DNA from: Macrostomum hystrix
Taxonomy: Eukaryota > Animalia > Platyhelminthes
Direction: 5' to 3'
Length of the DNA stretch: 64,000 nucleotides
NCBI GenBank assembly: GCA_950097015.1
Contig: CATNEN010000033.1
Span: 1,054,001-1,118,000 of the forward strand
Numbering within the stretch: the stretch's first letter is position 1; the number at the start of each line of letters is the position of its first letter. Positions 10,656 through 56,419 of the stretch are shown here, in pieces. The notes below the pieces were generated by a model. The model did not search any database. It was given only the letters and a program-made list of their open reading frames with translations, and was not told where the DNA came from. Made by a program: the position numbers and the translations under genes.

Positions 10656-12323
10656 ATGATACTCGGTAAAGCCATCAGCCGATTCAAAGAGAAACTAGAA
10701 AAATGTAGCGCCGAACACTCGAAGCTTGAAGACGCAACTTCAGCGAGGCGCGAGGCGATCGCTGAGGCCGAGAAGCTCAGCGCCCGAGTACTTTCTGGAG
10801 TTGCACCCGGAGCTCCGCCGACGCCGACTCAACAGACTCGGTCGACCTTCGATCAACAGACTGGTATTGCTGGGAGCCTTCGATACTACACTGGCGGAGT
10901 GGGCGGCACACCCAGACTGCCGCAGCAGTTGAAATTCAATGAAGCCCAGCTGTCCGCAGATTCTCAAGCGTCGGAGATGCGCTCCGAGGCGGCTCGACTA
11001 GCGACCTTCGGGGAGGACAACGAAGCCGCTGCCGAACTGGCCGCAGCAGGCTTCTACTCGAATGGCGGTAACCTTCGCTGCGCCTTCTGCCACGGGCTGC
11101 TTGGACCCAGACTACCTGGCGAGTCCGTCATGACGGCGCACGCGCGCCAGTTTTGCACCTGTCCTTTCGTGCTTCGCATGGACGTCAGAAACGTGCCGAT
11201 CGACGATGATCACTCGACCACGACCCGCTGCCGGTGCCGACCAGCTGTACAGTGCGGCGATCTGGGCAACGTAGCCTGGGATACAGAGGCCACCATGCAA
11301 GCTCGGGGTGGACGCCACAAAGGGCTCGAAACACCGGATGCTGCAGCACTCCTGACCAGCGCCGGGTCCCCGATCGTGTCAGCCAGGGTCGCCTCCGTTG
11401 CAGCAGCACCAGACATCTTGGTCAATCTGGAGACCCTGGAGGCCTGCGCTGCCGACGTACCTCCACTATCACCGGAGCTTCGAGATCTAACAGCTCGACA
11501 ACGCACTTTCGTGCCTGGTTTCAGTGACCTTCCAACGATGCTAACTGACACGCTGGCTGAGGCGGGGTTCTCGGTCTTCAAGATGGGGGCTGTCGCTTGC
11601 TTCAGCTGCGGCCTTTGCTTGCAGCGCTGGCCAGTCCACGAGGACCCCTGGGTGCTGCACGCCACCTGGTCACCCCGATGCGCCCACCTGCTGCTGGCCC
11701 GCGGTGCAGCTTTCGTCTGCGCCACGCGAGCATCGATGCTGACTGTCGTCCGAGTTGCCGCTGATGCTCGCCGTTCTGACATGCCACCTTCAGTGCTCAA
11801 AAACAACCATTTTCAAGACGAAATTTCCGACACGGCCGCTCTGAGTGCGTCAAACTCCGGTGCTGTCCTGCGCTTCCGCAACGGGCCGCGTGACGTCCGC
11901 GCCCGCTTCGACTGGCCGATGCTGCGCGACGCTCAGCGCATCCTCAGCCTCGGTGCGGTCCCCGAGCTCCGTGCGCTAATAGAACTGCAACTCGCGCGCA
12001 CCGGCGCTGATTTCTCCAGCCCGGAGATTCTGCTGGCCTGCGCCCTGCAGCTCCGCGTTGAGCGTTTCTCGCTGGGACTGGAAGCCGAGGATTTCCTGGC
12101 GGAGCAGTTGAGCCGGTTGCGCTCCGCCTGGCCGGCAGAGCCGCCAGCGCTGGCGGAAAACGACGAGCCCTGGCGCTCTTGCAAGGTCTGCCTCGATCGT
12201 CGGGTCGACGTTTTGCTGCGAGACTGCGGCCACCTCTGCTGCTGCAGCCGATGCTGCCGGAGCCTCGTGATCTGTCCGATCTGCCGGTCCGACATCCGGG
12301 CTGAGCTTCTGGTTCGGCTGTAG
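10656..12323 (+). CDS. Inhibitor-of-apoptosis (IAP/BIRC) protein: 2 BIR domains + C-terminal RING, single exon
   Basis: Two exact CX2CX16HX6C BIR signatures (CAFC...H...C and CFSC...H...C) and a C-terminal IAP-type RING (CKVC-X11-CGH...CSRC...CPIC). A polypyrimidine-AG at ~10610-10620 precedes the ATG; AATAAA at ~12405. Confidence 0.92.
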   Translation: MILGKAISRFKEKLEKCSAEHSKLEDATSARREAIAEAEKLSARVLSGVAPGAPPTPTQQTRSTFDQQTGIAGSLRYYTGGVGGTPRLPQQLKFNEAQLSADSQASEMRSEAARLATFGEDNEAAAELAAAGFYSNGGNLRCAFCHGLLGPRLPGESVMTAHARQFCTCPFVLRMDVRNVPIDDDHSTTTRCRCRPAVQCGDLGNVAWDTEATMQARGGRHKGLETPDAAALLTSAGSPIVSARVASVAAAPDILVNLETLEACAADVPPLSPELRDLTARQRTFVPGFSDLPTMLTDTLAEAGFSVFKMGAVACFSCGLCLQRWPVHEDPWVLHATWSPRCAHLLLARGAAFVCATRASMLTVVRVAADARRSDMPPSVLKNNHFQDEISDTAALSASNSGAVLRFRNGPRDVRARFDWPMLRDAQRILSLGAVPELRALIELQLARTGADFSSPEILLACALQLRVERFSLGLEAEDFLAEQLSRLRSAWPAEPPALAENDEPWRSCKVCLDRRVDVLLRDCGHLCCCSRCCRSLVICPICRSDIRAELLVRL

Positions 12324-14090: not shown

Positions 14091-17000
14091 TCATACCATG
14101 AGTTGCCAGCGGTTGACAACGGAGGCGGCACCCAGTGCGGCGGTCAGAAGAAGGAGGTTCGCGGCCAGGTTGTCTGCAGTTGTAGTGAGACGAAGCGGGT
14201 GTTGAGGGAAGAAGCAAGTAGGTGTTTTGAGACAAAGCCTGTGTTTTGAGACGAAGCGGGTGTTATAAGAACAAGCAGGTTTTTTAGACGAAGCGGGTGT
14301 TGTGGGACGAAGCAGGTGTTTTTAGACGAAGCGGGTGTTTTGAGACGAAGCGGGTGTTTAGAGACGAAGCATGCTTTGAGACAAAGATGGTGTTTTTAGA
14401 CGAAGCGGGTGTTGTGAGACAAATCGGGTGTTGTGAGACAAAGCGAGTGTTGTGAGACAAATCGGGTGTTGTGAGACAAATCGGGTGTTGTGAGATGAAG
14501 CGGGTGTTGTGAGATGAAGCGGGTGTTGTGAGACGAAGCATGTGTTGTGAGACGAAAACATGTGCTGTGAGACGAAGCGGGTGTTCTGAATCATCAGTAG
14601 CAACCACAATGATGAAGCTCTCAATGAGCTTCCGTGAATATTTATGAGTGCCTTGGTGTTTCAGTTCAGTTCAGAGCTTGACTCACTGGCACCGGAGGCG
14701 GTGCTGTAGCCCAGAGCCTGTTTCTGACTGTCGCTCAGCTCGGCCAGTTGGCTGCTGGTCACCGCCGATTTCTGCGAGGCGCTGAACGAAGCCAGCTGGC
14801 TGGCGCTGAAATCCTTGAATTTGCTGGTCGACATGCCTGAGATGACCGAGGCGTCGATGTAGCCGATCTGACCGGAAGTCAAGGTCCGAATGTCTGTGGT
14901 CGACAGGCCACCTAGTTGGCGGGGTGGGTGCCGGGTTGGGTGGCGAAATCAACGTGATTTTGGTCTCGCAAGACAAATGTCTTGGGGGAGTTTGGTTTGC
15001 TGAAGCTGGTCTCTCAAAGACAAATGTCTTGGGGGGGAGTTTGTTTTCGGCTTTTTAAAGTTGTTGTCTTTAAAGCCATTGCTGAGTTGGGAGGCTTCCA
15101 AGAAAGCTGTCAATATGTGAGTTGTGCTCACTGATGAGGTTGGCCAGGCTTGTGAAGTAGCTGGTCTGCCAGCTGGTCACGCTGCTGCCCAGCGAGGAGG
15201 CCTTCAAGCGGTTGACGTAGCTCTGCATGACGTCTGCTGAGCAGGGCCCTGGCGTGCCGAGCTCGGTCATGGAGTTGCTGGGAGGTAAACCAGCGGGAGG
15301 AACAAGGGTTCAATGAGCTTGAGCACTATAGAGCATATGGCCTTCCTTTCTACAGAAGAAAAGTGCATCAGTTGAGTTCTCTTTCCCTTTCTCCCCTTCA
15401 TTTTCCACTTCTCTGTTGTCCTCTAGTTTTTTATTGCAAACTGCATGTCTCATCACTCACTCTCTCCTCTACCATGTATCATGAAATTTCCCAGTTACCA
15501 TGGCAACTAGGCAGTAGAGCTTCAATGCAGAAGCGGCTATAGAAAAATGCATTTCACCCTCCCGTTTGGCTTGTGCGGGCAGGAATGCTTCTTGTGCCGC
15601 TCATTGACAAAGCACAATGCCTCTCTCGTTGCCCAACCTCCCTTCTACCCGTCTCTGTCGGTCGCCAGTCGACCTTTAATGTGCACACAATTGGTGGATT
15701 TCGCGCAGGTCGCTGCCGTGACGACCCAGCCGCCAAAGCGTTTGATAGTTAGTTACGGTGTAGGTCTTCATTTTTGTCTCTAACTGGCTTCATTGTCTGC
15801 CTACTCCGCGACAATGCCGGTTGCGGGTAGAAAATCAATTAGCTAATTAGCATTCGCATTGCAGCCCTGGCTCACAGCACGTTGTTCTCGTTGAAATTGT
15901 TGACGTAAGTCGGTGAGGCGCCGCAGGCCAGGTAGCCCAGGGAGCTCAGCTCGCTGCGCGTCATGCGGCTGGAGTCGTTCGTCTTGGCGTTGGCGATGTA
16001 GGCGCTCACAATGGCCGCTTTCTGCGCGAATTCAATTCGAGAGTAAATCAATAGGCTAGGATGATGAGATTGTGCAGATACTCGTAGTGAAGTCGGGAGG
16101 ATTAGCCGCGGCCAAGGAGAATAGAGAACTACTAGGGCGAGAGAGCGAGTAGAGGACGGAAATAGCCTAAAAGTGAAGGGGACGGAGAATAGGCGAGGGC
16201 GAAGGTTGGTGAGGGCGATGAATAATAATAATAACCGTTATCTTATGATTACGAGGATAAATTCCCCAATTAATAAGAATTGCAGGGCTGTGGGCAATGG
16301 CACATTATTTGGTGACACTCGACCCGCAGCCAGCGAGGAGGCAATTCTGCCCATTTCGCTGACTTGGAGCACACAGATACTGTACGCAGGCACTCGCTCA
16401 CACATGTGTGAGCATATTTCTCTGATTTTCTCATCGTCAGGCAGTTTACACTTTCACTGTGCCTTGGAGGTTGGCCCTCAAGGGCGTAAATTGCACGACA
16501 AGCCTCCAAGTCTTCTCTCCGCGGCTGCGCCCCAAATAAATGTGGCCTCGCCGTGGAATCGAACTTAGGGACCGTGGTGCGAGAGGCAAACGCGTTAACC
16601 GCTCTGCCACCGACCCCCCGAGGGCGATAAATAAGCTTCCGCACTCACCGAAGCGTCCGGCATGAGCTTGCAGTACTTTCCAATGTCGCTGATGTGGGCC
16701 ACGTCAGAGTAGGGGATGCGAGCGATCTCGGCCGAGCTCCAGCACTGCGTGAGGCAGCCGACGGTCAGCAGGACGCTGCTGGTCCACATGCTGGTGCCGT
16801 TGTAGGCGGCCTCCGTCTTGGCCTTCAGCTGCGTGCACTGGTCGCTGCTCCAGGCGGCGTTGGCCAGGCCGAAAGTGCTGAAGCAGGTCTGGAACTCGCT
16901 CTGCGCCATGGCCTGGATCTGGGCCGCGGTCAGCTAAAAAATTTGGTCCGTTAGCGAACTTGACTCACCTTGTTGACAGTTATAATTGAATTTCCCGGTT

Positions 17001-20000
17001 GATTGAAGCTCACCTGAGCGACACCGCTAGCCAGGTTCTGGACATCGTTGCAGGTGAGCGCCGACACCGAGCGCCTACGACGCCTTCCGGAGCCGCCACC
17101 AGTGACGACGCTGCCGTCGATGACGCTGATGATGTAGCGCTGCGCATCCGCGATGGCGCTGGCGTGCGCCTGCACCTCCGCGCTGTCGCAGTCGGCCCTG
17201 TGTCCGTGGGAGGCCCGCTCGAGGCAAGAGTCGTTGGTCTGGGCGGCGTCGGTGGCGACAGCACCGCAGTCGGTGCGCACATCGTCCCGGTTGATCTTGC
17301 TGACATTGCCGAGGCTGGCCATGAAGGCGAAGCACATCCGGACAGAGCTGGTGCTGTAATTGCCTGAGCTGGGGTTCTCGCTGCGAGGTGCGTTGGGGCG
17401 GTTCGGGATGCTGTAGCTTCAGTATGGATTGGGAATGGATTGGGAATGGATTGGGGATGGATTGGGAATTGATTAGGAATGGATTGGGAATGGATTGAGA
17501 ATGGATTGGGAATTGATTGGGAATTGATTGGGAATTGATTGGGAATTGATTGGAATGGATTGGGAATTGATTAGGAATGGATTGGGAATTGATTAGGAAT
17601 GGATTGGGAATGGATTGAGAATTGATTGGGAATTGATTGGGAATTGATTGGGAATTGATTGGGAATTGATTGGAATGGATTGGGAATGGATTGGGAACGG
17701 ATTGGGAATTGATTGGAATGGATTGGGAATTGATTGGAATGGATTGGGAATTGATTGGAATGGATTGGGAATGGATTGGGAATTGATTGGAATGGATTGG
17801 GAATGGATTGGGAACGGATTGGGAATTGATTGGAATGGATTGGGAATTGATTGGAACGGATTGGGAATTGATTGGAATGGATTGGGAATTGATTGGAATG
17901 GATTGGGAATGGATTGGGAATTGATTGGAATGGATTGGGAATGGATTGGGAACGGATTGGGAATTGATTGGAATTGATTGGGAATTGATTTGAATGGATT
18001 GGGAATTGATTGGGAATGGATTGGGAATTGATTGGAATTGATTGGGAATTGATTGGAATGGATTGGGAATGGATTGGGAATGGATTGGGAACGGATTGGG
18101 AATTGATTGGAATGGATTGGGAATTGATTGGAATGGATTGGGAATTGATTGGAATGGATTGGGAATGGATTGGGAACGGATTGGGAATTGATTGGAATGG
18201 ATTGGGAATTGATTGGAATGGATTGGGAATTGATTGGAATGGATTGGGAATTGATTGGGAATAGATTGGGAATTGATTGGGAATGGATTGGGAATTGATT
18301 GGAATGGATTGGGAATTGATTGGAATGGATTGGGAATTGATTGGAATGGATTGGGAATTGATTGGAATGGATTGGGAATTGATTGGAATGGATTGGGAAT
18401 TGATTGGGAATGGATTGGGAATTGATTGGAATGGATTGGGAATTGATTGGGAATGGAATGGGAATAGATTGGAATGGATTGGGAATGGATTGGGAAATGA
18501 CTGAGGATGTATTGGGGAGTGGCTCACTTGTACAGCCTGAAGTATCTGGCGCAGATGGCCCTGAGGTAGGTGACATTGGGCGGGCACTGCGCCATGCGAA
18601 GGATGACAGATTCGGCTGCGCTCTGGTCCAGCTTGTTGATCTGGGCGGAGGTCAGGACGCAGGGCATGACAGCGCTGACCACACTGGAGTTCCAAGTCAC
18701 CAGGCTGTCCAGATTCGTGTCATTGGAGCCGCCTGAGCCGGACATGTCGCCGTGGGCGGTGCAGAGCTCGTGCACCAGCCGTTGGTGGGCCATAGACAGC
18801 TTCGTGCTCTTCTCGAACGCGCCGACTCCCTGCAGGGCCTGGCAGAAGGTGGGCAGCGCGCTGCTCGGAACGCTGCGAAGCAGCCCGACGCTGCGTTTGG
18901 CGATTTCACGGCATTTTGTTAGGACTTGCCTCGCTGCTCAAGGATGACTGGATCAACCCCACCTACCCCACCTGCCAACCTCAGCTTCTTCGCGTACATA
19001 ACCACTCTACCTCACCAGCCCAGTCTACTCCACCTACCCAGTCTACCCCACCTACCTAGTCTACCCAACCTACCCAGTCTACCCCACCTACCCAGTCTAC
19101 CCACATTCCCAGTCTACCCCATCTACCCAGTCTACCCAACCTACCCAGTCTACCCCACCTACTCAGTCCTACCCCACCCACTCAGTCTACCCCACCCACT
19201 CAGTCTACCCTACCTACCAAGTCTAACCCACCCTCCAACCAATCGTTTCTTCACACTATACCCAGACTACCCCATCTAACCAAGTCCACTCAATTAATTC
19301 ACCCTACCCCACATTCGCAGACTACCCCACCTACCAATCTTTTTTACCCCACAATCCACTTAGTATGCGTCAGTCTCTCAGCCAATAGCAGCTCACGAGA
19401 TGAACATGGCGAAGCTGCCAATGTCAGCCAGCGCGGTGGTGGTGATGTTGCTGCATTTGGCGAAGGACTGGCAGATGCAGCCAGTGACGACGCTGCCAGC
19501 TCCGACGCCCACGCTGCCGTGGTAGGCCTTGGACTTGTAGGCCACCACGGACATCTGCGAGCAGGGCAGGCGGCTGAGCTGCTCGGAGTTCAAGTGGCAC
19601 AGCAGGCTGGCGTCTACGTCGGATGCGCTGAAGGAGCTGAGGCTGGAGCCCTGCAGGAAGGTGCTCTGGAACTGGTCGACCATCGCGCCGATGGTACTGC
19701 GTCGCTTCTGCAGTGGAAGATTGTTCAGGGGATTCGGCTGTTTAGTCTGCAGACTGGGAAGGTCGCCACACTCACTAAATTGTTCAGCTGGTGCCAATTC
19801 TACTCGTACAGCTGGGTGAACTGAAGCACTTGGAAATTTAGACATAATGCTTCCTAAATGATTCGGAAACTGGGCGTCTCGGCGCATCTGAAGGCTGCGT
19901 ATGGCTGTTCAGTCCATGGACATGGGGGGACGCCACACTCAAACCCAAACCCTAACCCTAAACCTAACCCTAACCCTAACCCCAACCCTCAATTACCCCA

Positions 20001-23000
20001 TCATAATACTGGCAATGCTGACTTAATTGTCTTGCTAAAGGAAAAAAATTGTTCCAGTTGATTCGGGAATCGAACCCACGACCTTCGAGTCGCGAATTTG
20101 ACGCCCTAAGCTCTGGGCTACAATCACTTCAGAATGCAGACCTGGGCGCTGATTCTGTCAGCAATGCCAGACTTCGCCGAGTCGCCGCCGCTGCTGCTGC
20201 CAGTGCTGGCAAAGGGGGACAGCAGCGACTGGAAGGTGGCCTGGTCGGTGGTGCCGGTCAGGGCGCTGCGGACATCCGCCGGAGTCATCTGCGTCATGGC
20301 GTTGATGCCCAAGCTGGCCATGGTCCTGGCGGTGGGTGGCGGACGCTGCAAGAAAGTTATGTAGGATTTATATTTAGTTTAGGTAGGATTTAGGTTTAGA
20401 TTTAGTTGGATTGAAGCTTAGGTAGGATTTAGGTTTAGATTTAGTTTAGGCAGGGTTTAGGTTCAGGTTTAGTTTAGGTAGGGTTTAGGTTCAGATTTTT
20501 CTATGGTTGGGGTTAAGTTTAGAATTTTGTTTAAGATCGGTTCAGTTTTGGATTTAGTATAGTCTTGAGTTTCTTTTGGGTTAGTTTGAGTTCAGCGCCC
20601 ACATTTTCCTGGCAGAACACAGTGTTGGGGTGGTCAGGCATGATGCTGCACATCTGCTTGAAGCAGGTGTCGTTCCGGCACAGTCCTGGGTCGATCTTGT
20701 CTCTGGGGAAGCTGAACAGGCTGTTCATGTAGATCATGCAGTTGCTCGCATCAGCCGTCACATTCTTTAGCATGTCGCGCAGGGCCGAAGCGCTGCGAGC
20801 GATCTGGGGCGGCGAGGTTGGCGACAGATGAGCAAGGGGAGATAATAGATCTAGCTGGGAAGATCTCGATGGGAATATGTAGATGGGAATATCCAGATGC
20901 TAATATCCAGGTGGGAAGATCAAGATGGGAAGATCTAGATGGGAAGATCATGTTGTGAAGATCCAGATCCAGATGGTAAGATCTAGATGGGAAGATCTAG
21001 ACGGGAAGATCAAGATGAGAAGATCTAGGTGTGAAGATCTAAATGGGAAAATCCAGATGGGAATATATAAATTGGAAGATCTAGATGTGAAGATCCAGTT
21101 GGGAAGATCTAGACGGGAAGATCTAGATGGGAAGATTTAGATGGGAAGATCTAAGTGGGAAGATCTAGATGGGAAGATCAAAATGGGAAGATCCAGATGG
21201 GAAGATCTAAATGGGAAGATCCAGATGGGAAGATCTAAATGGGAAGATCCAGATGGGAAGATCTAGATGGGAAGATCTAGATGGGAAGATCTAGGCCGGT
21301 GAGCGCCCTCACATCTCTCGGTGCCATGCCGCTAAAGTTGAAGGCTTGGACCGCCTGCTCGAGGTCAGCTCCGTTTCTGAACAGGTCTCGCAGCTTCTCT
21401 GGCGCGATCTTGTCGATGCAGGCCTTGAGTCGCCCCAGCAGGGTCTGGTTGACTCGCTGCACCAGCTCCTGGCACTGCAAGGGACATTAATTTTGTTTTA
21501 ATGTGCTTGGGATCTTCGAATTTCCCAACAGCAGGGAGATCCCAACCCTTGATTTTATATTCCCACAATTGCCGAATTCTTTGATCACTCGCGCTCACCT
21601 TTGACTCCCTGTCCGGATCGTCCTTGAGTCGGTCGGACAGCGCAGTCAGCTCTTCCGGTGTCATGTTGCGCCAAATGGTCACTTCAATGCGACCAATGAC
21701 GTCAGCCTTGAGAACCCGGATCATGCCCCTGTGTGACAGAATGGCACGTTGCTACGCTCGTAACATACTCCTAGTCGTCAGTCAAATTGAGACACCCTCC
21801 TTGACCCCATCACTCCAATTGAGACACCCTCCTTGACCCCGTCACTCCAATTGAGACACCCTCCTTGACCCCGTCACTCCAACTGAGACACCCTCCTTGA
21901 ACCCTCACTCCAACTGAGACACCCTTCTTGGACCCTCACTCCAATTGAGACACCCTCCTTGAGCCCTCACTCCAATTGAGACACCCTTCTTGGAACCTCA
22001 CTCCAATTGAGACACCCTTCTTGGAACCTCACTCCAATTGAGACACCCTCCTTGAGCCCACCTCTTTAAACCCCTTCCTCGATCGCGGACATCACCTGAC
22101 ATCGCTGGCGTCCAATCTGGTCGGGTCTAGGTTCTGCGTCACTGCCTTGTCCACCGCGGCCTTGACCTCCGGGCAGCCGTTCAGTCGCTCCTGCACCATT
22201 GCGCCCAGGGTCGGCGCACCGCCCCCGGAAGTGACTGCGCCAGCGGGCACCGATGTCCGGCTCAGCAGCGCCTGCTGCAGCTTTACCGGCTGCAAATGGG
22301 AGAGGTTTCAGAGGAAATTGTGATTGGTGAGGAAACTCTGTGCTCCTTTTTAATTCCGAATTCAGGGGGGCTTGGTTTAAAATCAATCATTTCAGAACAA
22401 GACCTTCCAATCTTGGACCTCCCCGGTCCGGCACCCACCGCGTCAGCAGCAATGCGCCTGATGTCGTCGGCGTTAAACTGGCAGTTAGCCAAAGCGTTGG
22501 CGACGTCCTCGCTTGTGAGATTGGCTGGCTGACCGCCTCCCGTGCAGCCCATAAGCAGCCCGCGCATTCGCTCCCTGGCCGCGTTCAGCAACTGGGCGTC
22601 CGCGCAGCCCGAGCCGATGCGCTGCATCAGCGCGTTGAGGAAGTCGACGCTGAAAATGTTTTGTTTTTAGTGGGTTTCAAGGATAGCGTTCCTTTTTAGA
22701 ATCTTAACCAACTGAAACATCCTCGCAGGCAAAACCCTCCGACAGTTTCTGTCACCCACCACCCCATTATGACAGACCCTCTCACCCACCGCCCCACTGA
22801 CTGAGCCAGTCCCCCTCACCCGTCACCCCACTGACAGAGCCAGTCCCTCTCACCCACCACCCACTGACTGAGCCAGTCCCTCCCACCCGCCGCCTCACAG
22901 ACAGAGCCAGTCCCTCTCACCCACCACCTCACAGACAGAGCCAGTCCCTCTCACCCACCACCTCACAGACAGAGCCAGTCCCTCTCACCCACCACCTCAC

Positions 23001-25360
23001 AGACAGAGCCAGTCCCTCTGACGCACCACCTCACAGACAGAGCCAGTCCCTCTGACGCACCACCTCACAGACAGAGCCAGTCCCTCTCACCCACCACCTC
23101 ACAGACGGAGCCAGTCCCTCTCACCCACCACCTCACAGACGGAGCCAGTCCCTCTCACCCGCCACCTCACAGACAGAGCCAGTCCCTCTCACCCACCACC
23201 TCACAGACAGAGCCAGTCCCTCTCACCCACCACCTCACAGACAGAGCCAGTCCCTCTCACCCACCACCTCACAGACAGAGCCAGTCCCTCTGACGCACCA
23301 CCTCACAGACAGAGCCAGTCCCTCTGACGCACCACCTCACAGACAGAGCCAGTCCCTCTGACGCACCACCTCACAGACAGAGCCAGTCCCTCTGACGCAC
23401 CACCTCACAGACAGAGCCAGTCCCTCTGACGCACCACCTCACAGACAGAGCCAGTCCCTCTCAACCCACCACCTCACAGACAGAGCCAGTTCCTCTCAAC
23501 CCACCACCTCACAGACAGAGCCAGTCCCTCTCAACCCACCACCTCACAGACAGAGCCAGTCCCTCTCACCCGCCACCTCACAGACAGAGCCAGTCCCTCT
23601 TACCCGCCACCTTACAGACAGAGCCAGTCCCTCTCACCCACCACCTCACAGACAGAGCCAGTCCCTCTTACCCGCCACCCCACTGAGCCAGTCCCTCCCA
23701 CCCACAGTAGGCGAGCCTGTACTCACACGCAGGGATTTCTGAGCTCCATGCAGCCCAGTCCATCGAACAGGGCCAGTCCCGGCGGCCTGTTGTCGGCAGT
23801 TTGGTTGGCCACTCGGCCCGCCATGCGCTGGAGGATGCCGAACTCAAACGGCGAACTGCGATTGCAGCGGCAGCCCTGCAGCAGCTCCTCCATGTTGATG
23901 GACTGCACGCGAGCTACGCAGGGAGACTGGGACTGTACCTTGGCCATGCAGGTCGCGCCGCGGCTAATCACTCTGGTCAGGTTGGCCTCAAAAGTGTTCT
24001 GAAAGAGTCAGTGCGAATCTATGATTAGTATTGTCAACACATTAATAAATATGTTCATCTTTTGGGAGAGGCAAAAGCACTCACCAGGAAGGGTGCAATG
24101 TCCGGCAGAGCGGACAAGGACAATGAGCCGACGATGCTTGGTGTCAAGTTGTTAATCTGGACCAGAATGGTGTCCAGGCCGGATTTGATGAGGGGCTGCG
24201 GTCTGGTTGTACAGCTTGGCGATGCAGGCAATCGGCTCCCGGCAAGTTGGCGAGGTGACTCGCTGCACCACCTGGGGCAGCAGGGTCAGGTTGCGCAGGA
24301 AGGCGCCGACCTTTTCCAGGTGGGCCTTGCGGTCAGCCAGTGTCATTGGCGGCGGCGACGTCGGCGGTGGCATCGAGGACATCATCGAGGACATCATGGA
24401 GGACATCTCGGCCATGATGGGGGCGCCGGTCATGGGTTTGGCGTCCATCATTAGCAGCTGCATGAGCGGCGCCAGGTCCGACTCTGAGCAGACGCGGCGG
24501 ATGAGGTCAAAGCTGAACTGAGAGTCGTCTGAAAGGCGATTGGGCGGTGCAATGCTTCAGGTATACAAGTGAAGGTCACTGGTTACCAACTTACCACCGT
24601 TAACTCATCGATACCTAATTGATACCTCATCGATACCTCATCGATACCTCATCGATACCTCATCGATACCTCATCGATACCTCATCGATACCTCATCGAT
24701 ACCTCATCGATACCCAATCAATACCTTAACGTGACCTTATCAATACCTATTAGATAACTAATTGACATTTAATCGATACCTCAAAAAACTTGATGTCGCT
24801 CACCTCGCCGATCGTCGACAGGCTGCAGCCGGCAGTTGCCTAGCGGATCGCACACGGGCTGCCCGGTTCCCCGAGTCTGATTGAATCGGCAATGAAGCGG
24901 GCTGGGCGGATTGCTGGAGGAATTCCTGTTGCACTCCGGGCAACAGTCGGCACCTAGGAAGATCTTGTCGGCTTGGCAGTTCTGCACCTTGCTGGCGTTG
25001 CAGCAGCGGCTGCCGCCGTCCACTGGCTCGCCGCAGAGGAGCGCGCTGACAGCCGGCCTTGCCGCAGGCGCTGAAGCACGGCGTGGCGGAGAGGTTGAGG
25101 TTCAGGCAGGTGGAGTTGCACACGGTGGACGGGCTGTAGCGGGCGCAGGACGGGCAGCAGTGGCCGGGCACGTCGTTGCTGGACACCAGCGAGCGGCCGC
25201 GGCCGCAGTCGCCAGCCGGCGCCGGGCACTGGGGAGCGAACATTGGGTCCCACTGCATCGGCGGCTGCTGCTGCGGTGGCTGCTGCTGCACTGACGGATG
25301 CGGCAGCAGTAGGCACATCAGAGCGGCCAACACGGCCACCCCTAGTCGATGCTTGAACAT
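14091..25360 (-). CDS. Otoancorin/stereocilin/mesothelin-superfamily GPI-anchored surface protein, ~16-17 exons
   Basis: ATG at 25360 starts a signal peptide (MFKHRLGVAVLAALMCLLL), followed by a Cys-rich CCPxC module. GC-rich exons lie at ~24530-24085, 23990-23725, 22660-22410, 22295-22095, 21740-21600, 21480-21290, 20810-20590, 20350-20130, 19710-19395, 18930-18528, 17400-17015, 16930-16650, 16020-15860, 15290-15130 and 14910-14687. There is a furin-like RRRRRS site. The C-terminal TLTSGQIGYIDASVISGMS...FSASQLASFSASQKSAVTSSQLAELSDSQKQAL resembles the OTOA/STRC C-terminus (recognised from memory). The last exon, 14173-14091, encodes the hydrophobic NLAANLLLLTAALGAASVV tail. Apparent frameshifts at ~25050 and ~24200. 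Confidence 0.72.
14190..14590. repeat. Intronic minisatellite, ~19-20 bp unit (gagacgaagcgggtgttgt)
   Basis: Direct tandem copies visible. Confidence 0.9.
15494..15507. promoter_or_regulatory. RFX X-box (intronic)
   Basis: GTTACCATGGCAAC, a perfect match to GTTNCCATGGNAAC. Confidence 0.6.
16280..16620 (-). mobile_element. tRNA-derived SINE, family A (longest copy)
   Basis: A-box TGGCAGAGCGG and B-box GTTCGATTCC on the minus strand. The body matches 2235-2440 and 59655-59810. A possible (TTA)n tail lies at ~16220-16235. Confidence 0.8.
17425..18500. repeat. Intronic satellite of 10/11-mers (ggaatggatt / gggaattgatt)
   Basis: About 1.07 kb of tandem copies between two exons. Confidence 0.95.
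18955..19350. repeat. Intronic degenerate repeat (ccacctacccagtctacc-like)
   Basis: Tandem 9/18-bp C-rich units. Confidence 0.85.
19715..20122 (-). mobile_element. Composite family-B SINE pieces interrupted by a (CCCTAA)n-like tract
   Basis: Head at 20050-20122 (GGTTCGATTCCCGAATC). Telomere-like run at ~19945-19990. The 3' block and the tgcttcagttcacccagctgta block lie at 19715-19945. Confidence 0.65.
20365..20525. repeat. Degenerate (TTTAGG/GGTTTAG)n intronic tract
   Basis: Repeated ggtttag and tttagg units. Confidence 0.7.
20835..21292. repeat. Intronic minisatellite, 14-bp unit gggaagatctagat
   Basis: Direct tandem copies. Confidence 0.9.
21785..22062. repeat. Intronic minisatellite, 32-bp unit gagacaccctccttgaccccgtcactccaatt
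   Basis: About 8-9 tandem copies. Confidence 0.92.
22770..23700. repeat. Intronic minisatellite, 34-bp unit cacagacagagccagtccctctcacccaccacct
   Basis: More than 25 tandem copies. Confidence 0.95.
24605..24782. repeat. Intronic minisatellite, 11-bp unit atcgatacctc
   Basis: Direct tandem copies. Confidence 0.9.
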
Positions 25361-25561
25361 TGTGGACTCAGTGCTACTATGGGATTCCAGTTTAGAACCG
25401 GGCATTGTCCCCGCCTCCCGCATAGTCCTCCCTTTTTGTACCCGAAGGCTTATCCTCATTTTTACCTCACCGCTCTTCCCTTCCCTGCCGCATCAGCCAA
25501 TCCCAGCCCGGATCTCATGAGGAGGCGAGCAGCGATGGGCGAGAACCGGGTGGGCGACTCG

Positions 25562-25575
25562 GTTGCCATGGTAAC
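25562..25575. promoter_or_regulatory. RFX X-box ~200 bp upstream of the otoancorin-like ATG
   Basis: GTTGCCATGGTAAC inside the extended palindrome tcgGTTGCCATGGTAACcga. Confidence 0.75.
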
Positions 25576-26054
25576 CGAAAAACACAGAAGATTTACGGAA
25601 TCGACGGTGGGTGGGGCACCGAGTGCGGGCCGGGTTAGTATGTTTTTTTGACAAAACTGGGCGTGCAGAACAAGCAGGGGCTGTCCAACTCAACACCCCA
25701 TTTCTGTTCTCCCATTTGTAGGGCGAGACACCCAACCCAAGCCGAAAAATACAATGGAACGACCTCAGTTCTGCAGTAAAATCCCTTCCTTCCCTGGGTG
25801 GGAAAATTCTGGAGCTTTGTTTTACTGCTTAGGCTTGGGACGCTAAACGCAGGCTTTAAATGCTCCTTTGAAGGTCATATCACTCAGCGTTATTGTTCGG
25901 CTCGCTTTTCCCATGCCCAGGATAATGGATGACCAAATTCTCAACTCAAAATAACGCGTTGATCAATTTGCTTCTGAGAGTGCATTAGACCTAGATAACA
26001 AACTGCCGATCATCCAGCCAGAATTATACCCCAAAATCTAGATTATATAATTAT

Positions 26055-26480
26055 ATTCCAATATCTAGCTAGAATCCCATTCCAATATCTAGCTAGAATC
26101 CCATTCCAATATCTAGCTAGAATCCCATTCCAATATCTAGCTAGAATATATTTCTAATATCTAGCTAGAATATATTTCCAATATCTAGCTAGAATATATT
26201 TCCAATATCTAGCTAGAATATATTTCCAATATCTAGCTAGAATATATTTCCAATATCTAGCTAGAATATATTTCCAATATCTAGCTAGAATATATTTCCA
26301 ATATCTAGCTAGAATATATTTCCAATATCTAGCTAGAATATATTTCCAATATCTAGCTAGAATATATTTCCAATATCTTGCTAGAATATATTTCCACTAT
26401 CTAGCTAGAATAATATTCCAATTTCTAGCTAGAATCCCATTCCAATATCTAGCTATAATCATATTCCAGCATCTAGCTAG
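26055..26480. repeat. Minisatellite, 24-bp unit ttccaatatctagctagaatatat
   Basis: About 17 tandem copies. Confidence 0.95.
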
Positions 26481-27149
26481 ATTCCCAGCCAATTATCCAG
26501 CAAGAATCCCACCTCAATATCAAGCTTAGATATTAATGCCAGCCCAAAAGCCACCTGACTTTAGTCATTGTGCGTATTCTCAAAACTCATCGACTGGGCT
26601 CAAAATAACTAGCTGTTAGTTGTTGTAGCAACGGAATCAAAGCACAACGGAGCGGCAGCGCTGGCAAGCAGTCAAGGCTGTGATTTGTTTATCTGTCGTC
26701 TTTTATCATTGCTCAGCTATTCCAAAGTTCCATTGTCTGTTGGTAGACAATGCCTGCTGCCATTGTTCCGTATCAAGCTGAGCAGCCATTCTCAATACCC
26801 AAATTGATTTTAGAAATAGTATTTAGCAATTTTATATTTTATATTTGTGAGAAAGTAAATCGATGCATTTTTCGAAGCAACAATCCATCTAACTGTTAAC
26901 TAGTCTAACACATTAACGTATCTTGCAGTTGACATATCTAACACATTAAATGTTTAGTAAGAAAAAATTCCATTAACTGGACATTAACCAGCAAGACAGA
27001 GATATATAAGCACCAAAATGAATTGCTTATTGAAAGACATCGAAAGTGTCTATATCTATATCAATGTGAGTACTATTATGTGCTCATGATTCGTAATAAT
27101 AGTGATCCCAAATCACAGCCCACGAACGCTTGTCTCAGCCATCCCAGTA

Positions 27150-27665
27150 TAACAGGGGTGAGATTTCCCTAACTGTCTCATCCCTCCCGTTTTATCAGGG
27201 GTGAGATTTCCCCAGCTGTCTCATCCCTCCCAGTTTATCAGGGGTGAGATTTCCCCAGCTGTTTCAGCCCTCACATTTTATCAGGGGTGAGATTTCCCCA
27301 GCTGTCTCATCCCACCCAGTTTATCAGGGGTGAGATTTCCTCAGCTGTCTCATCCCACCAAGTTTATCAGGGGTGAGATTACATAGCTGTCTCATCCCTC
27401 CCAGTTTATCAGGGCTGAGATTTCCCCAGCTGTTTCAGCGCTCACATTTTATCAGGGGTGAGATTTCCCCAGCTGTTTCGTCCCTCCCAGTTTATCAGGG
27501 GTGAGATTTCCTCAGCTGTCTCATCCTACCAAGTTTATCGGGGTGAGATTTCCTCAGCTGTCTCATCCTACCAAGTTTATCGGGGTGAGATTTCCTCAGC
27601 TGTCTCATCCTACCAAGTTTATCGGGTTGAGATTTCCTTAGCTGTCTCATCCCTCCCAGTTTATC
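27150..27665. repeat. Minisatellite, ~43-bp unit ttatcaggggtgagatttccccagctgtctcatccctcccagt
   Basis: About 12 tandem copies with no unique spacers. Confidence 0.92.
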
Positions 27666-30550: not shown

Positions 30551-33500
30551 TTACACTTCGGACTCGCCGAACCGCAGCCGCTGCCTTCGCTGACTCGCGG
30601 GTCTCGGGGGCAAAGGAGGCGTCACGGTAGACGGCACAGAGCGAGGCGGCGGCGGCGGCGGCGGCAGCGGCAGAGGCCTGGTTGACGGCAGCTGCGATGA
30701 CGCAGTGATGCCGTTGCTGACGTGAGGCGGTTCATCGATCTGATATTGAGTCCGGCCGGCATCAAACTCAAACTCTAACACGACTGCCTGGTGCCGGCCA
30801 ACAAGCACCAGCAGCCACCAGCTCAGGCCAAACAGCACGGCAAAGAAACAGGTGGTGAGCAGCAGCAGGAATGCAGCGGCATTTGCCTGGGGCACCGCCT
30901 TGGAGCAGAGGTCAACGGACAGTGTCTCTACGGCCAGCCGCAGATCGTCGCAATGGCCGACACTGGCCAGCAAACCAGCGGCGAGGGGGTCGAGAAACTC
31001 GGCGAACAATGGCAGGTGTCGTGCCAGGCAGACTTCAAAGCGAGCATCCACGCGGGCCAGCATGCCCGGCTTGTCGGCCAGGGTGTCTTGCACCACTCTG
31101 AGGGCCGCCAGCAGCGCTTCTGTCAGGCTGGTGAAGTTGCGTGAGCTCTGCAACAGCTCAAAATTCTGACGCAGCTCGACCAGACGGTCAGCGAGGCCTG
31201 CTGAGCGAGTCATTGAAGCGTTCAGCTGCGTCACGGAGTGTCGCAAAATCGCCGCATCGTTGTTACTGGGCTCTGCGTTTAAAGCAACGCTTGCTAAGTT
31301 CGCTACGTCGGCGATAAAGCGGTCGCTGCGCGGCATGAGAAGCAGCGGCCGTCGAAGCTCCGCAATGGAGTCAGTGTAGTTCTCAGCGTCCAAGAGGCCG
31401 GCCAACTGGGGCAGCACGGAGGTGATGCTGCCGAGCTCCGGTGGGATCAGTGCGTTGGCATCCGTGGCGTTGATCTGATCCTTGACAAGTTTGGCGCCGG
31501 TGAGGAACTGCGACTGCGTCAGATTGCTGGAGAGCAAGGCAGTAGCGTTAAGCAGACCTGTGGAAAAGTGTTCAGGTATAGCTCAGGTAGTGTTCAGGTA
31601 GTGCTCTTTCGTCTAACAGTAGAATATTTTCAAAGATTAAATGCTTTTTTCTTAGATTAAAGTATACAAAAGTCGTGAAAAATGACAGAACTAGTCAAGC
31701 AGAAAAAACGATCGACTAATTATGAAGTTATAGGCTTGCTTATTAGATCAACTACCAAATATACTTTTATTGACCTCTGCTCTCTAAGATCACCTGTGAG
31801 TCCGAAGACGCTGAACAGTGTCGCATTGGGATTGCCGCACCTGCCACGGATGGTCTCAATCAGCCGACTTGGCAGCCGAGCTGGCAGTGAGATCGGCAGC
31901 TCCTGTCGCAGTTTCAGCGCCTCGCGCACCATCGGCCAAAGTCGGACTTCGGCGAATTCGTCCAACCGCGAGTCCCAGAGCTGGTTGCCAGACTGGCTGG
32001 CCAGGTAGCGGCAGGCTTCCACCTGCAGCTCGCCGGTTGCGTAGAAGAACGCCAGGCCGAACAAGAGCGGCAGCAGGGACAGCAGTGCAGCGGTGAGCAG
32101 TACTAGAGAGCAGTCGAACGAGCAGCAATACAGAAACCCGTTCCACTCTCGCTTCTGCAGGCGGCGCATTTTCTGGCTGCGACCTGACAGTCGACTGCAG
32201 TACGCGGATTTCCCTTGCTCCATGTCGCGATCGGGAAAATGCGGCGATGACCAGGGCGAACTGGAAAAGCCGCCGCTGGAGGTGCCGGAGGTCTTGGAGG
32301 AGGGCGATGAACAACAGAGCGGTGAAGAGTTGGTGGACAGCGGCACTAGAGTGTGACTGGGTGTCGGGACAGTGCCCTCCTCGAACGAGGCGTCCAAGCG
32401 ACAGGCGGTGCACAAGTAGCGGGTCAGAGACCACAGCAGCACGCAGCAGATCGCGCAGGCCAGCAGGAACACCAGGCAGGAGACAACCACCAGGACAACC
32501 ACCGCTGTGCCAGCGGCTGCGACGGCGCCCCACAGGCTGGGATCCGTGGCCGCCCGATCAAAGCCGGACTTGACGCCGATAATGGTGAGTTCCGCCTGGT
32601 CGAACTGCGAAGACACACTGTCAATCAGGCCGTTTAACAGCTGGCGGATCACGCCTGAGATGGCTTGAAGCCCGGTGGACAGCGAGTCCTTGGCCTTCTC
32701 CACCTGCCGCTGCACAGTTGTCAATGTCCAGCTTGACCATTTTTTTCAGAAGCGTAACTATGGCAACACTGGAGTCCTGTGTCTAGCTTGGTATCGTTCA
32801 CAGCCAGTCTAAGGTTGGCCAGGCTAGTAACTAGGGAGGCGCAGTGGCCAGGTGCGAATAGATGACCAAACCGGTTGCAGACGGTGCTCAGGGGGTCCTG
32901 CAGAGTCTCCCGGTGGACCTGCAGCTGAGCGGAAAACTGTTGCAGTGGCTTGATCACGGTGTCCCTGGCGTTGTCAATATACCGCATGGAGTTCACTGTG
33001 CCGTTCACTGTCGCCAGGAAGAACTGCAAGTGACCTGACATCGGGGCAGGCGATGAAATAGCACGGATAGATTTTCAGCACATAGCAATAATAAAACACT
33101 GCATAAAGTATATGTTTGAGCAGCGCACCTATGAGCTTGTCGATCCCGTAGTCGGACATCAGCAAATCCAGCAGCTCCGTGCCGAAGTTCAGAAACAGCC
33201 GCTCCACCGATGGATAGGCGCTCTCAAATGTGTCAATGATGGTCCGGTTGGACTCGACTAGGGAACGGGTCAGGAACCTGTCCAGGTGGCTCACTGTGGT
33301 GGACACGATTGCGCGCGCGGAGTTGGAGCCGCTTGAGGAGGAGGTGAGAGCTACGATGCCGCCAGCCTGCGTGCAGTAGGCGATGAGCACGGCAATGCAC
33401 AGCAGACTAGCAGCACCCATCATCCCGATCTGGACAAGTAGGCAACGGTCTCTACCGGACAGCGTCTTTTTGGACAGGCGCACCGCTCTGGTGTCCTCCA

Positions 33501-36700: not shown

Positions 36701-36888
36701 TTACAGATGCGTTGCTATAGCAACGGAAGCAGCACACGCAGCTATGAACAAAAAGCAGGCTGAATTGACTGCAGCATTGTTAGTCTCCGTGTCCGACGGA
36801 TGCGACTGCTGCTGCTGATGCTTCTGCTGCCGCTGTTGCTTGTCAAACTCGGAGTCCAACTTTGCTGCGTCATTCAGCATCGGCAGCA

Positions 36889-56405: not shown

Positions 56406-56419
56406 GTTTCCATGGCAAC
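56406..56419. promoter_or_regulatory. RFX X-box ~240 bp upstream of the lectin-like gene ATG
   Basis: GTTTCCATGGCAAC, a perfect match to GTTNCCATGGNAAC. Confidence 0.7.

What the first reader, a model, noticed from the sequence alone, without database searches (positions are those of the whole stretch)
25562..25575. Perfect RFX X-box in the promoter of the otoancorin/stereocilin-like gene
Seen: GTTGCCATGGTAAC lies ~200 bp upstream of the ATG at 25360, with the palindrome extended by the flanks (tcg...cga). Established: RFX factors bind this motif and drive ciliary gene batteries, and vertebrate OTOA and STRC are GPI-type tethers of sensory hair bundles. A 12-fixed-base motif is expected about 0.004 times in 64 kb at uniform composition, yet three perfect copies occur in this window. 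Inference: this is an invertebrate cilium-associated mechanosensory or adhesive tether gene under RFX control.
Basis: partly seen in the sequence, partly recalled or inferred. Interest (0 to 1): 0.72.

Follow-up and report, generated by a model that had tools for sequence, protein, structure and literature searches.

The report
Conserved RFX X-box, flatworm stereocilin-like gene
A textbook binding site for the cilia-gene regulator RFX lies about 200 bp upstream of a flatworm relative of the inner-ear protein stereocilin and is kept at the same place in a second flatworm species, so it is very likely a working promoter element, though where the gene is expressed is still untested.

Summary
GTTGCCATGGTAAC is at 25562-25575, 202-215 bp upstream of a minus-strand ATG (25360) that opens a signal peptide. 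GTTNCCATGGNAAC occurs three times in the window, against none in any of 100 shuffles, and the flanks are unrelated.

The gene has 17 GT-AG exons (25360-14091). It is the syntenic ortholog of a 1408-aa Macrostomum lignano "secreted protein". The C-terminal 270 aa of that protein match turtle stereocilin at E=6e-12 in a 5.8-billion-sequence database. Two window exons align to the same stereocilin residues.

Both M. lignano gene copies keep the X-box (GTCTCCATGGCAAC) at -229/-230, against -215 here. It is followed at spacings fixed to within 1 nt by an inverted CCAAT box, a TATA-like block and a block where the M. lignano transcript model begins. Sequence between the blocks is at random-level identity. 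The window's second X-box (15494) lies in an intron of the same gene and is also conserved.

Two single-base frame changes in the CDS are probably assembly errors.

The scan noted X-boxes at other loci of this genome, but not this gene family.

Verdict: a new member of a known kind, of moderate interest.

The parts
25562..25575 (-). Promoter-proximal X-box. It reads GTTACCATGGCAAC in gene orientation and starts 215 nt upstream of the ATG.
   Evidence: The orthologous box GTCTCCATGGCAAC is at -229/-230 in both M. lignano copies. Chance of such a match at that position is about 10 in 4000 simulations.
25497..25501 (-). Inverted CCAAT box (ATTGG in gene orientation), 74 nt downstream of the X-box start.
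   Evidence: The spacing to the X-box is 74 nt in the window and 73-74 nt in M. lignano.
25432..25442 (-). Conserved block GGTACAAA(A/T)AG. This is a TATA-like element about 35 nt upstream of the inferred transcript start.
   Evidence: Conserved at -82 (window) and -98 (M. lignano), 58-59 nt after ATTGG. It lies 35 nt upstream of the start of the M. lignano transcript model.
25400..25409 (-). Conserved block GACAAT(G/T)CCC at the inferred transcription start.
   Evidence: Conserved at -49 and -64. The 5'-partial M. lignano model PAA56041.1 begins at the A of this block and is not preceded by AG.
14091..25360 (-). Coding span of the stereocilin-family gene, about 1432 codons in 17 exons. Approximate exons: 25360-24804, 24528-24085, 23998-23727, 22649-22439, 22289-22096, 21728-21599, 21474-21313, 20803-20603, 20345-20142, 19707-19397, 18890-18528, 17380-17014, 16933-16649, 16021-15876, 15277-15132, 14911-14687, 14173-14091.
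   Evidence: tblastn of the M. lignano ortholog gives 16 collinear HSPs at 45-87% identity. High GC3 marks the exons. Junctions were fitted. All 16 introns are GT-AG, and the total of 4301 nt equals 3n+2.
25286..25360 (-). Signal peptide.
   Evidence: Basic n-region followed by a 13-residue hydrophobic core with Kyte-Doolittle mean 2.8. UniRef names the orthologs 'Secreted protein'.
25036..25042 (-). First frame change, in exon 1. One extra base relative to the reading frame of the ortholog.
   Evidence: Adjacent HSPs end at 25040 and start at 25038 in different frames. M. lignano exon 1 is uninterrupted.
24185..24200 (-). Second frame change, in exon 2, at a run of four C.
   Evidence: Coding continues in another frame with high GC3 and leaves no room for an intron.
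17071..17085 (-). Run of five arginines, a furin-type site about 290 residues before the C-terminus.
   Evidence: It is conserved as RRRKR in M. lignano. The mesothelin precursor is cut by furin to leave a 327-residue GPI-anchored C-terminal part (PMC2628672).
15494..15507 (-). Intronic X-box, GTTGCCATGGTAAC in gene orientation, in the intron between exons 14 and 15.
   Evidence: The orthologous M. lignano intron has GTTGCCAATGGCAAC (3-nt spacer) aligned to it within otherwise unalignable sequence. Chance is about 13 in 4000.
14687..14911 (-). Exon 16, carrying 8-residue SxxQxxxL-type repeats of the stereocilin C-terminal homology region.
   Evidence: BLASTP to turtle stereocilin residues 1736-1802 gives E=1e-9. 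Pfam ALTTAQ_rpt scores 27.6 bits against a cut-off of 26.4. The AF2 model has pLDDT 82-90 over the repeats. Mesothelin gives the top structural matches, with Z up to 5.9.
14091..14173 (-). Last exon. Small residues are followed by a hydrophobic tail of about 19 residues and then 7 more residues. This is a GPI-signal-like or short membrane anchor.
   Evidence: Read and hydropathy. The same pattern (NLLLL..AA.G.AS...RWQ) is in the M. lignano protein.

Best explanation
The 14-mer is a functional RFX-type X-box in the proximal promoter of a flatworm stereocilin-family gene. The window comes from a Macrostomum-like flatworm.

Shown:
- The motif fits the strictest X-box consensus.
- It is kept in sequence and position in the M. 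lignano ortholog. Surrounding sequence has diverged to random-level identity.
- It heads a fixed-spacing module of X-box, inverted CCAAT box (74 nt), TATA-like block (59 nt) and a start block (33 nt).
- A second X-box in a 3' intron of the same gene is also conserved.
- The protein is homologous to stereocilin over its C-terminal ~280 residues.

Inferred:
- An RFX dimer binds the two half-sites about 160 bp upstream of the transcription start. Together with a CCAAT-binding factor (NF-Y type), it switches the gene on in cells that run the RFX programme. In a flatworm those are most likely ciliated epidermal or ciliated sensory cells.
- The product is secreted, probably cut at the poly-arginine site, and held at the cell surface by its hydrophobic C-terminal signal, as mesothelin and otoancorin are.
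For: - Motif and enrichment. It is not part of a repeat.
- Ortholog and synteny: the single hit of the exhaustive search is M. lignano A0A1I8J2W6, collinear over 16 HSPs. The loci share prominin-like and hydantoinase neighbours.
- Conservation: boxes at L001:9835 and L002:6575, alignment A3 and block positions. Ungapped background identity is 2-3 of 10, against 13 of 15 at the box.
- Chance levels: 0.0025 for the promoter box and 0.003 for the intronic box.
- Intronic box.
- Transcript start: the M. lignano model starts inside the fourth conserved block, with no AG before it.
- Predictive value: in Drosophila, X-boxes conserved in sequence and position between two divergent species predicted true dRFX targets in 16 of 25 tested genes, and palindromic boxes were over-represented (PMC2375033). 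This locus meets their criteria, with 2 of 12 bases different and a 14-nt shift.
- Gene identity.
Against: - There are no binding or expression data.
- The TSS inference rests on where one 5'-partial M. lignano model begins.
- The left half-site of the M. lignano proximal box is degenerate (GTCTCC).
- Only two lineages are compared. The two M. lignano copies are near-identical and count as one.
- RFX factors also regulate non-ciliary genes (PMC3493443), so the box does not by itself place the protein at cilia.
- The window CDS has two frame changes. If these are real, the gene is broken here.
- Pfam Stereocilin scores only 10.3 bits on the ortholog. No similarity to stereocilin is detectable outside the C-terminal ~280 residues.
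Confidence: 0.68

Rival explanations
1. The box is a real RFX site, but it serves a non-ciliary RFX programme, as RFX1-, RFX5- and RFX7-type factors do in other animals. The gene would be expressed in non-ciliated secretory, gland or other surface cells. The stereocilin-like protein would be a general surface or glycocalyx component, not a cilium- or mechanoreceptor-associated tether.
For: RFX proteins are implicated in many processes besides ciliogenesis (PMC3493443). The third X-box of the window (56406) heads another secreted, heavily glycosylated protein with no ciliary signature. Mesothelin, a family member, is expressed on non-ciliated mesothelium (PMC2628672).
Against: In invertebrates studied so far (C. 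elegans, Drosophila), conserved palindromic X-boxes mark mainly ciliated-cell genes (PMC2375033). Other scan notes place X-boxes next to known ciliary genes in this genome (unchecked). Most of a flatworm's surface cells are ciliated (own knowledge).
Confidence: 0.2
2. The conserved palindrome is bound by a factor other than RFX, or has another role such as a boundary element. Its fit to the X-box consensus would be coincidental.
For: No binding data exist. The M. lignano proximal copy has one weak half-site. Neither the window nor M. lignano was checked for an RFX gene.
Against: Two independent sites in the same gene fit the strictest X-box consensus, RTNRCC N1-3 RGYAAC. The intronic pair tolerates a 2-to-3 nt change in spacer, which is exactly the flexibility known for RFX sites (PMC2375033). 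No other factor is known for this motif (own knowledge).
Confidence: 0.07
3. In this genome the gene is a recently inactivated pseudogene. The promoter module would then be a relic that no longer matters.
For: Two single-base frame changes sit in exons 1 and 2, while the M. lignano exons are intact.
Against: All 17 exons keep high GC3. All 16 introns are GT-AG and there are no in-frame stops. The neighbouring hydantoinase gene shows the same kind of frame change relative to M. lignano. One of the two sites in the stereocilin-like gene is at a C4 run, where consensus indel errors are common. Assembly indel errors explain all three frame changes more simply.
Confidence: 0.1
4. The motif and its copies are chance occurrences or were spread by a mobile element.
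For: Other scan notes describe X-box arrays in a Helitron-like end and in a minisatellite elsewhere in this genome (unchecked).
Against: No matches occurred in 100 shuffles. The flanks are unrelated. Both gene-associated copies are conserved at orthologous positions in another species.
Confidence: 0.02

Closest known systems
X-box promoter motifs of RFX target genes (C. elegans xbx genes under DAF-19; Drosophila dRFX targets, Laurencon et al. 2007, PMC2375033)
   Same: A 14-nt imperfect palindrome fits RTNRCC N1-3 RGYAAC. It lies within about 250 bp upstream of the ATG. It is conserved in sequence and position between divergent species. The gene carries more than one box.
   Different: The organism is a flatworm, where no RFX regulon has been described in the papers searched. 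The target is an extracellular stereocilin-family protein, not an intraflagellar-transport or axonemal component. One of the conserved boxes is in a 3' intron.
Stereocilin (STRC), with otoancorin and mesothelin as the same superfamily
   Same: - Signal peptide followed by a long all-helical body.
- C-terminal ~280 residues homologous to stereocilin: 26% identity over 283 residues with 9 gaps, E=6.4e-12 database-wide.
- Poly-basic site about 290 residues before the end, as in the mesothelin precursor.
- Hydrophobic C-terminal tail.
- Mesothelin gives the best structural matches for exon 16.
   Different: - The Pfam Stereocilin and Mesothelin models do not reach threshold.
- There is no detectable similarity in the N-terminal 1100 residues.
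- The N-terminus has two CCPxC cysteine-rich motifs that no Pfam family matched; whether vertebrate members have such motifs was not checked.
- Only one 50%-identity cluster, from Macrostomum, matches the exon used in the exhaustive search.
MHC class II X-Y module (RFX complex on the X box with NF-Y on an inverted CCAAT Y box)
   Same: An X-box is followed on the gene side by an inverted CCAAT box at a spacing that evolution has kept fixed. This suggests cooperative binding by RFX and a CCAAT-binding factor.
   Different: The gap is about 60 nt, against roughly 20 nt in the MHC module (own knowledge). There are no S or X2 boxes. The RFX5/RFXAP/RFXANK complex is a vertebrate feature (own knowledge). 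This is a resemblance in working principle only, not membership.

Membership tests
RFX X-box cis-element | Match to the restrictive consensus RTNRCC N1-3 RGYAAC / GTNRCC N0-3 RGYAAC | tested here: met
   for 25562 and 15494. The consensus is quoted from PMC2375033.
RFX X-box cis-element | Promoter-proximal position, upstream of the ATG and near the TSS | tested here: met
   The box is 202-215 nt upstream of the ATG. It is about 160 nt upstream of the start inferred from the M. lignano model. The TSS in this genome is not mapped.
RFX X-box cis-element | Conservation of sequence (at most 4 of 12 bases changed) and position (within 500 bp) in a divergent species | tested here: met
   Two of 12 bases differ and the shift is 14 nt. 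The intronic box is also conserved. Chance is 0.0025 and 0.003 respectively.
RFX X-box cis-element | Bound by an RFX protein, and expression depends on RFX | not testable with these tools
   Needs ChIP, EMSA or RNAi.
RFX X-box cis-element | An RFX gene is present in the organism | not tested
RFX is widespread in animals (PMC3493443).
Stereocilin / otoancorin / mesothelin superfamily | Significant sequence similarity to an accepted member | tested here: met
   Ortholog residues 1113-1380 against turtle stereocilin (which carries PF21058) give E=6.4e-12 in 5.8e9 sequences. BLASTP gives 79.7 bits. Window exons align to the same stereocilin residues with E=1e-9 and E=2e-4.
Stereocilin / otoancorin / mesothelin superfamily | Pfam PF21058 (Stereocilin) or PF06060 (Mesothelin) above the gathering score | tested here: not met
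   No hit in any window exon. The ortholog scores 10.3 bits against a cut-off of 26.6. The region that is homologous lies outside PF21058 in turtle stereocilin, where PF21058 covers residues 810-1205.
Stereocilin / otoancorin / mesothelin superfamily | Helical (ARM-type) superhelix | tested here: inconclusive
   The single-sequence AF2 model of the ortholog C-terminus failed, at pLDDT 41. The exon 16 model (pLDDT 73) has mesothelin as its four best Foldseek hits, though with E of 0.7 or more. Mesothelin is also its seven best VIA hits, with Z 3.5-5.9 against at most 3.2 for unrelated chains. Z in this range can arise from common helical arrangements.
Stereocilin / otoancorin / mesothelin superfamily | N-terminal signal peptide and C-terminal GPI-attachment signal | tested here: inconclusive
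   The signal peptide is clear by reading and hydropathy. The C-terminus has small residues and a hydrophobic stretch, but 7 further residues follow it, and no GPI predictor was available.
Stereocilin / otoancorin / mesothelin superfamily | Furin-type cleavage that releases an N-terminal part from a C-terminal membrane-bound part of about 300 residues (mesothelin precursor) | tested here: inconclusive
   RRRRR at 17071-17085 is conserved as RRRKR in M. lignano, about 290 residues from the end (PMC2628672). Cleavage itself is not testable here.
Stereocilin / otoancorin / mesothelin superfamily | Localisation to sensory hair bundles or ciliated sensory cells | not testable with these tools
   No expression data could be reached. 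The M. lignano gene ids occur in no paper searched.

The most novel reading that the evidence does not exclude
The gene encodes the flatworm counterpart of the stereocilin/otoancorin-type surface link. It would be made in collar-type ciliated mechanoreceptors, which have a central cilium ringed by microvilli, under direct RFX control. On this reading, both the link protein and its transcriptional wiring predate the split between flatworms and vertebrates, and vertebrate hair-bundle links have a deep bilaterian origin.
Probability: 0.15. Interest if true: 0.8.

Novelty: new member of a known kind. Interest (0 to 1): 0.5.

Why it matters
Stereocilin and otoancorin are human deafness genes. In the library searches run here no paper turned up that discusses stereocilin in an invertebrate or flatworm. 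This locus shows a clear flatworm member whose promoter carries a conserved RFX module. M. lignano, the species holding the ortholog, supports transgenesis, RNAi and in situ hybridisation (own knowledge). Both open questions can therefore be tested directly with an X-box-mutant reporter and rfx knock-down: which cells make the protein, and whether RFX drives it. The fixed-spacing arrangement of X-box, CCAAT box, TATA-like block and start block is also a compact, ready-made example of promoter grammar in a phylum where almost none has been described.

Tried and rejected
- Pfam on about 20 exon-sized pieces gave only ALTTAQ_rpt and no Stereocilin or Mesothelin hit.
- phmmer of three exons and of the whole ortholog against PDB sequences gave nothing relevant.
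- A word search with exon 11 gave nothing. A word search with ortholog residues 850-1408 found only the ortholog itself, because low-complexity words filled the candidate list. Narrowing to 1113-1380 then worked.
- The language-model search on one exon was uninformative.
- Exact look-up of ten window ORFs found none in the collection. The representative P0001 has no contig on record.
- Direct tblastn of turtle stereocilin against the window was not significant, because the exons are short.
- The stereocilin N-terminal 1540 residues show no significant match to the ortholog's residues 180-1112.
- AF2 of the ortholog C-terminus without an alignment failed. MAFFT misplaced exon fragments, so no exon-fragment alignment was used for folding.
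- A profile of flatworm plus turtle C-termini hit no mesothelin chain in the PDB, only the designed repeat protein 9ZEM.
- A small upstream ORF starting at the ATG inside the box is not conserved beyond three residues, so the box is not a coding start (read).
- No ncRNA or tRNA lies at the promoter.
- Literature searches for ALTTAQ, the M. lignano gene ids, Macrostomum with RFX, and stereocilin in invertebrates gave nothing usable.
- A joined spliced model was neither built nor searched. Exons were searched one at a time by reference, and the full-length database ortholog served as the proxy.

Full report
**Observation**

The 14-mer GTTGCCATGGTAAC is at 25562-25575, flanked by tcg and cga. On the minus strand an ATG at 25360 opens a typical signal peptide, so the motif lies 202-215 nt upstream of the start codon. 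No match occurred in any of 100 dinucleotide-preserving shuffles. With the C. elegans consensus there are five sites against 0.1 expected. The flanks of the three copies do not align, so they are not copies of a repeat. No tRNA or Rfam family lies at the promoter.

**The gene**

High third-position GC marks a chain of minus-strand exons from 25360 down to about 14100, separated by introns full of minisatellites. Exon-by-exon Pfam, PDB-sequence and word searches left the protein open. The only hit was the ALTTAQ repeat in exon 16.

The exhaustive representative search with exon 11 returned a single protein, P0001. This is UniRef A0A1I8J2W6, a 1408-aa "Secreted protein" of Macrostomum lignano, 70% identical over the exon. 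tblastn of P0001 on the window gives 16 collinear HSPs at 45-87% identity. Fitted junctions give 17 exons with 16 GT-AG introns.

Two cluster members lie on M. lignano contigs, fetched here as L001 and L002. Gene order is the same as in the window: prominin-like gene, this gene, hydantoinase/S-Me-THD gene. The window therefore comes from a Macrostomum-like flatworm and holds the ortholog. Earlier scan notes about spliced-leader AUGs in this genome pointed the same way. I did not build or search a joined spliced model. Exons were searched singly by reference, and the database ortholog served as the full-length proxy.

**Family**

- Restricting the word search to ortholog residues 1113-1380 found turtle stereocilin (P0006, 1917 aa, Pfam PF21058) at E=6.4e-12 for a database of 5.8 billion sequences.
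- BLASTP aligns 283 residues at 26% identity with 9 gaps to stereocilin 1533-1809.
- Window exons 16 and 14 align directly to the matching stereocilin residues, with E=1e-9 and E=2e-4.
- The language-model search puts the ortholog nearest to Stereocilin, Mesothelin and Otoancorin_N clusters at 0.83-0.84, which is a lead only.
- An AF2 model of exon 16 (pLDDT 73, and 82-90 over the repeats) has human mesothelin as its four best Foldseek hits among 350,542 chains, though with E of 0.7 or more.
- The same model has mesothelin as its seven best VIA hits, with Z 3.5-5.9 and rmsd 2.6 A over 70 residues for the best. Unrelated chains reach Z 3.2 at most. This is modest support.
- Against membership: the Pfam Stereocilin model scores only 10.3 bits, and nothing upstream of residue about 1100 resembles stereocilin.

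The architecture also fits the family:

- a signal peptide;
- a conserved poly-arginine site about 290 residues before the end (17071-17085; RRRKR in M. lignano);
- a last exon (14173-14091) that encodes small residues followed by a conserved hydrophobic tail.

This matches the furin-cut, GPI-anchored mesothelin precursor described in PMC2628672. I accept stereocilin-family membership for the C-terminal domain. The GPI anchor and the cleavage are inferences.

**The decisive test: conservation**

Both M. lignano copies carry GTCTCCATGGCAAC at -229/-230 from the ATG, against -215 here. In the promoter alignment the box is an island, with 13 of 15 positions identical. Ungapped background identity around it is 2-3 per 10, which is random level.

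Three further blocks follow at spacings conserved to within 1 nt:

| Block | Distance from previous block |
|---|---|
| Inverted CCAAT box | 74 nt after the X-box start |
| GGTACAAA(A/T)AG | 58-59 nt |
| GACAAT(G/T)CCC | 33-34 nt |

The 5'-partial M. lignano model PAA56041.1 begins at the A of the last block and is not preceded by an AG. That argues for a transcription start there and not a trans-splice site. The third block then sits at about -35 (TATA-like) and the X-box centre at about -160.

The window's second perfect X-box (15494) lies in the intron between exons 14 and 15. The orthologous M. lignano intron has GTTGCCAATGGCAAC aligned to it. Both half-sites are intact and the spacer is 3 nt, not 2, within otherwise unalignable sequence.

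Simulations put the chance of such matches at 10/4000 for the promoter box and 13/4000 for the intronic box. The Drosophila study that introduced this criterion found that X-boxes conserved in sequence and position predicted true dRFX targets in 16 of 25 tested genes. It also found palindromic boxes over-represented (PMC2375033). This gene passes that criterion twice.

**Mechanism**

The motif, its conservation, the module and the family are shown. The following steps are inferred.

- An RFX dimer occupies the two half-sites and cooperates with a CCAAT-binding factor.
- Together they activate transcription about 160 bp downstream, in cells that express RFX.
- The intronic box acts as a second input.

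Which RFX programme is involved, ciliary or other, is not settled, because RFX factors also control non-ciliary genes (PMC3493443). No paper in the library links RFX with Macrostomum or with stereocilin.

**Caveats**

- The CDS has two single-base frame changes, at about 25039 in exon 1 and at about 24190 in exon 2 at a C4 run. The summed exon length is 3n+2, which is consistent with this.
- M. lignano is intact at both places.
- The neighbouring hydantoinase gene shows the same kind of frame change relative to M. lignano, and all downstream exons look fully coding. Assembly indel errors are therefore the likelier cause, but this could not be checked.
- Conservation rests on two lineages only.

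**Verdict**

The gene identity and a conserved RFX-type promoter module are supported. A ciliary or mechanosensory role is open. This is a new member of a known kind, of moderate interest. The scan has noted X-boxes at other loci of this genome, but no note mentions this gene family.

Noticed in passing
window 56406-56419 (+), with the ATG at 56657 and the large exon 60819-63872: The third X-box (GTTTCCATGGCAAC) lies about 240 bp upstream of another signal-peptide start on the + strand, with a CCAAT box 97 nt downstream of it. Relative to its gene it has the same orientation as the 25562 box, and the two share CCATGGCAACCGA. The gene's 1017-aa exon encodes N-glycosylation-rich repeats of about 190 aa and a Ser/Thr-rich tail. 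It has no Pfam or PDB match.
   Followed up: partly
window 32754-32767 and 36711-36724: There are two further X-box-like sites by the C. elegans consensus. GTAACTATGGCAAC lies inside the prominin-like gene, between its large minus-strand ORFs. The perfect palindrome GTTGCTATAGCAAC lies at the end of an ORF with weak similarity to a mitochondrial fission regulator.
   Followed up: no
window 7884-7927 (-), hydantoinase / S-Me-THD gene: The two large ORFs of this gene are in different frames. Their M. lignano counterparts are contiguous in one frame, with 45 nt there against 43 nt here. This is a third apparent frame change in about 7 kb of conserved coding sequence and points to consensus indel errors in the assembly.
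   Followed up: partly
window 14687-14911 (-); ortholog residues 1307-1375: The 8-residue SxxQxxxL repeats at the end of the stereocilin homology region pass Pfam ALTTAQ_rpt. As a flatworm-plus-turtle profile, they match PDB 9ZEM 'HeliScrew4' at E=1.6e-10. HeliScrew4 is a designed 8-residue-repeat helical screw presented as a novel structural unit in bioRxiv 10.64898/2025.12.04.691947. Natural stereocilin-family proteins and ALTTAQ repeats may be natural examples of that geometry.
   Followed up: partly
L001:8850-8863 and L002:5630-5643: M. lignano has an additional distal X-box (GTCACCATGGCAAC) about 1.2 kb upstream of the ATG. It has no counterpart within 2 kb upstream in the window, where a 24-bp minisatellite sits.
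   Followed up: partly
L001:18871-19041 against L002:15681-15908: One M. lignano copy (the PAA56041.1 model) lacks parts of the 8-residue repeat exon and is only 47% identical there. The other copy is intact. Either the homeologs differ or the model or assembly is faulty.
   Followed up: no
window 14221-14589, 17424-18496, 19002-19232, 20847-21294, 21778-22059, 22773-23705, 24604-24783, 26052-26481, 27131-27665: Nearly every long intron of the gene, and the upstream intergenic region, holds a different minisatellite. Units are 11-43 bp with up to 100 copies. Several give long spurious ORFs.
   Followed up: no
window 10656-12323 (+): A BIR plus RING (IAP-type) gene lies between the stereocilin-like gene and the hydantoinase gene. 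The corresponding 4-kb interval of M. lignano L002 has no called gene.
   Followed up: no
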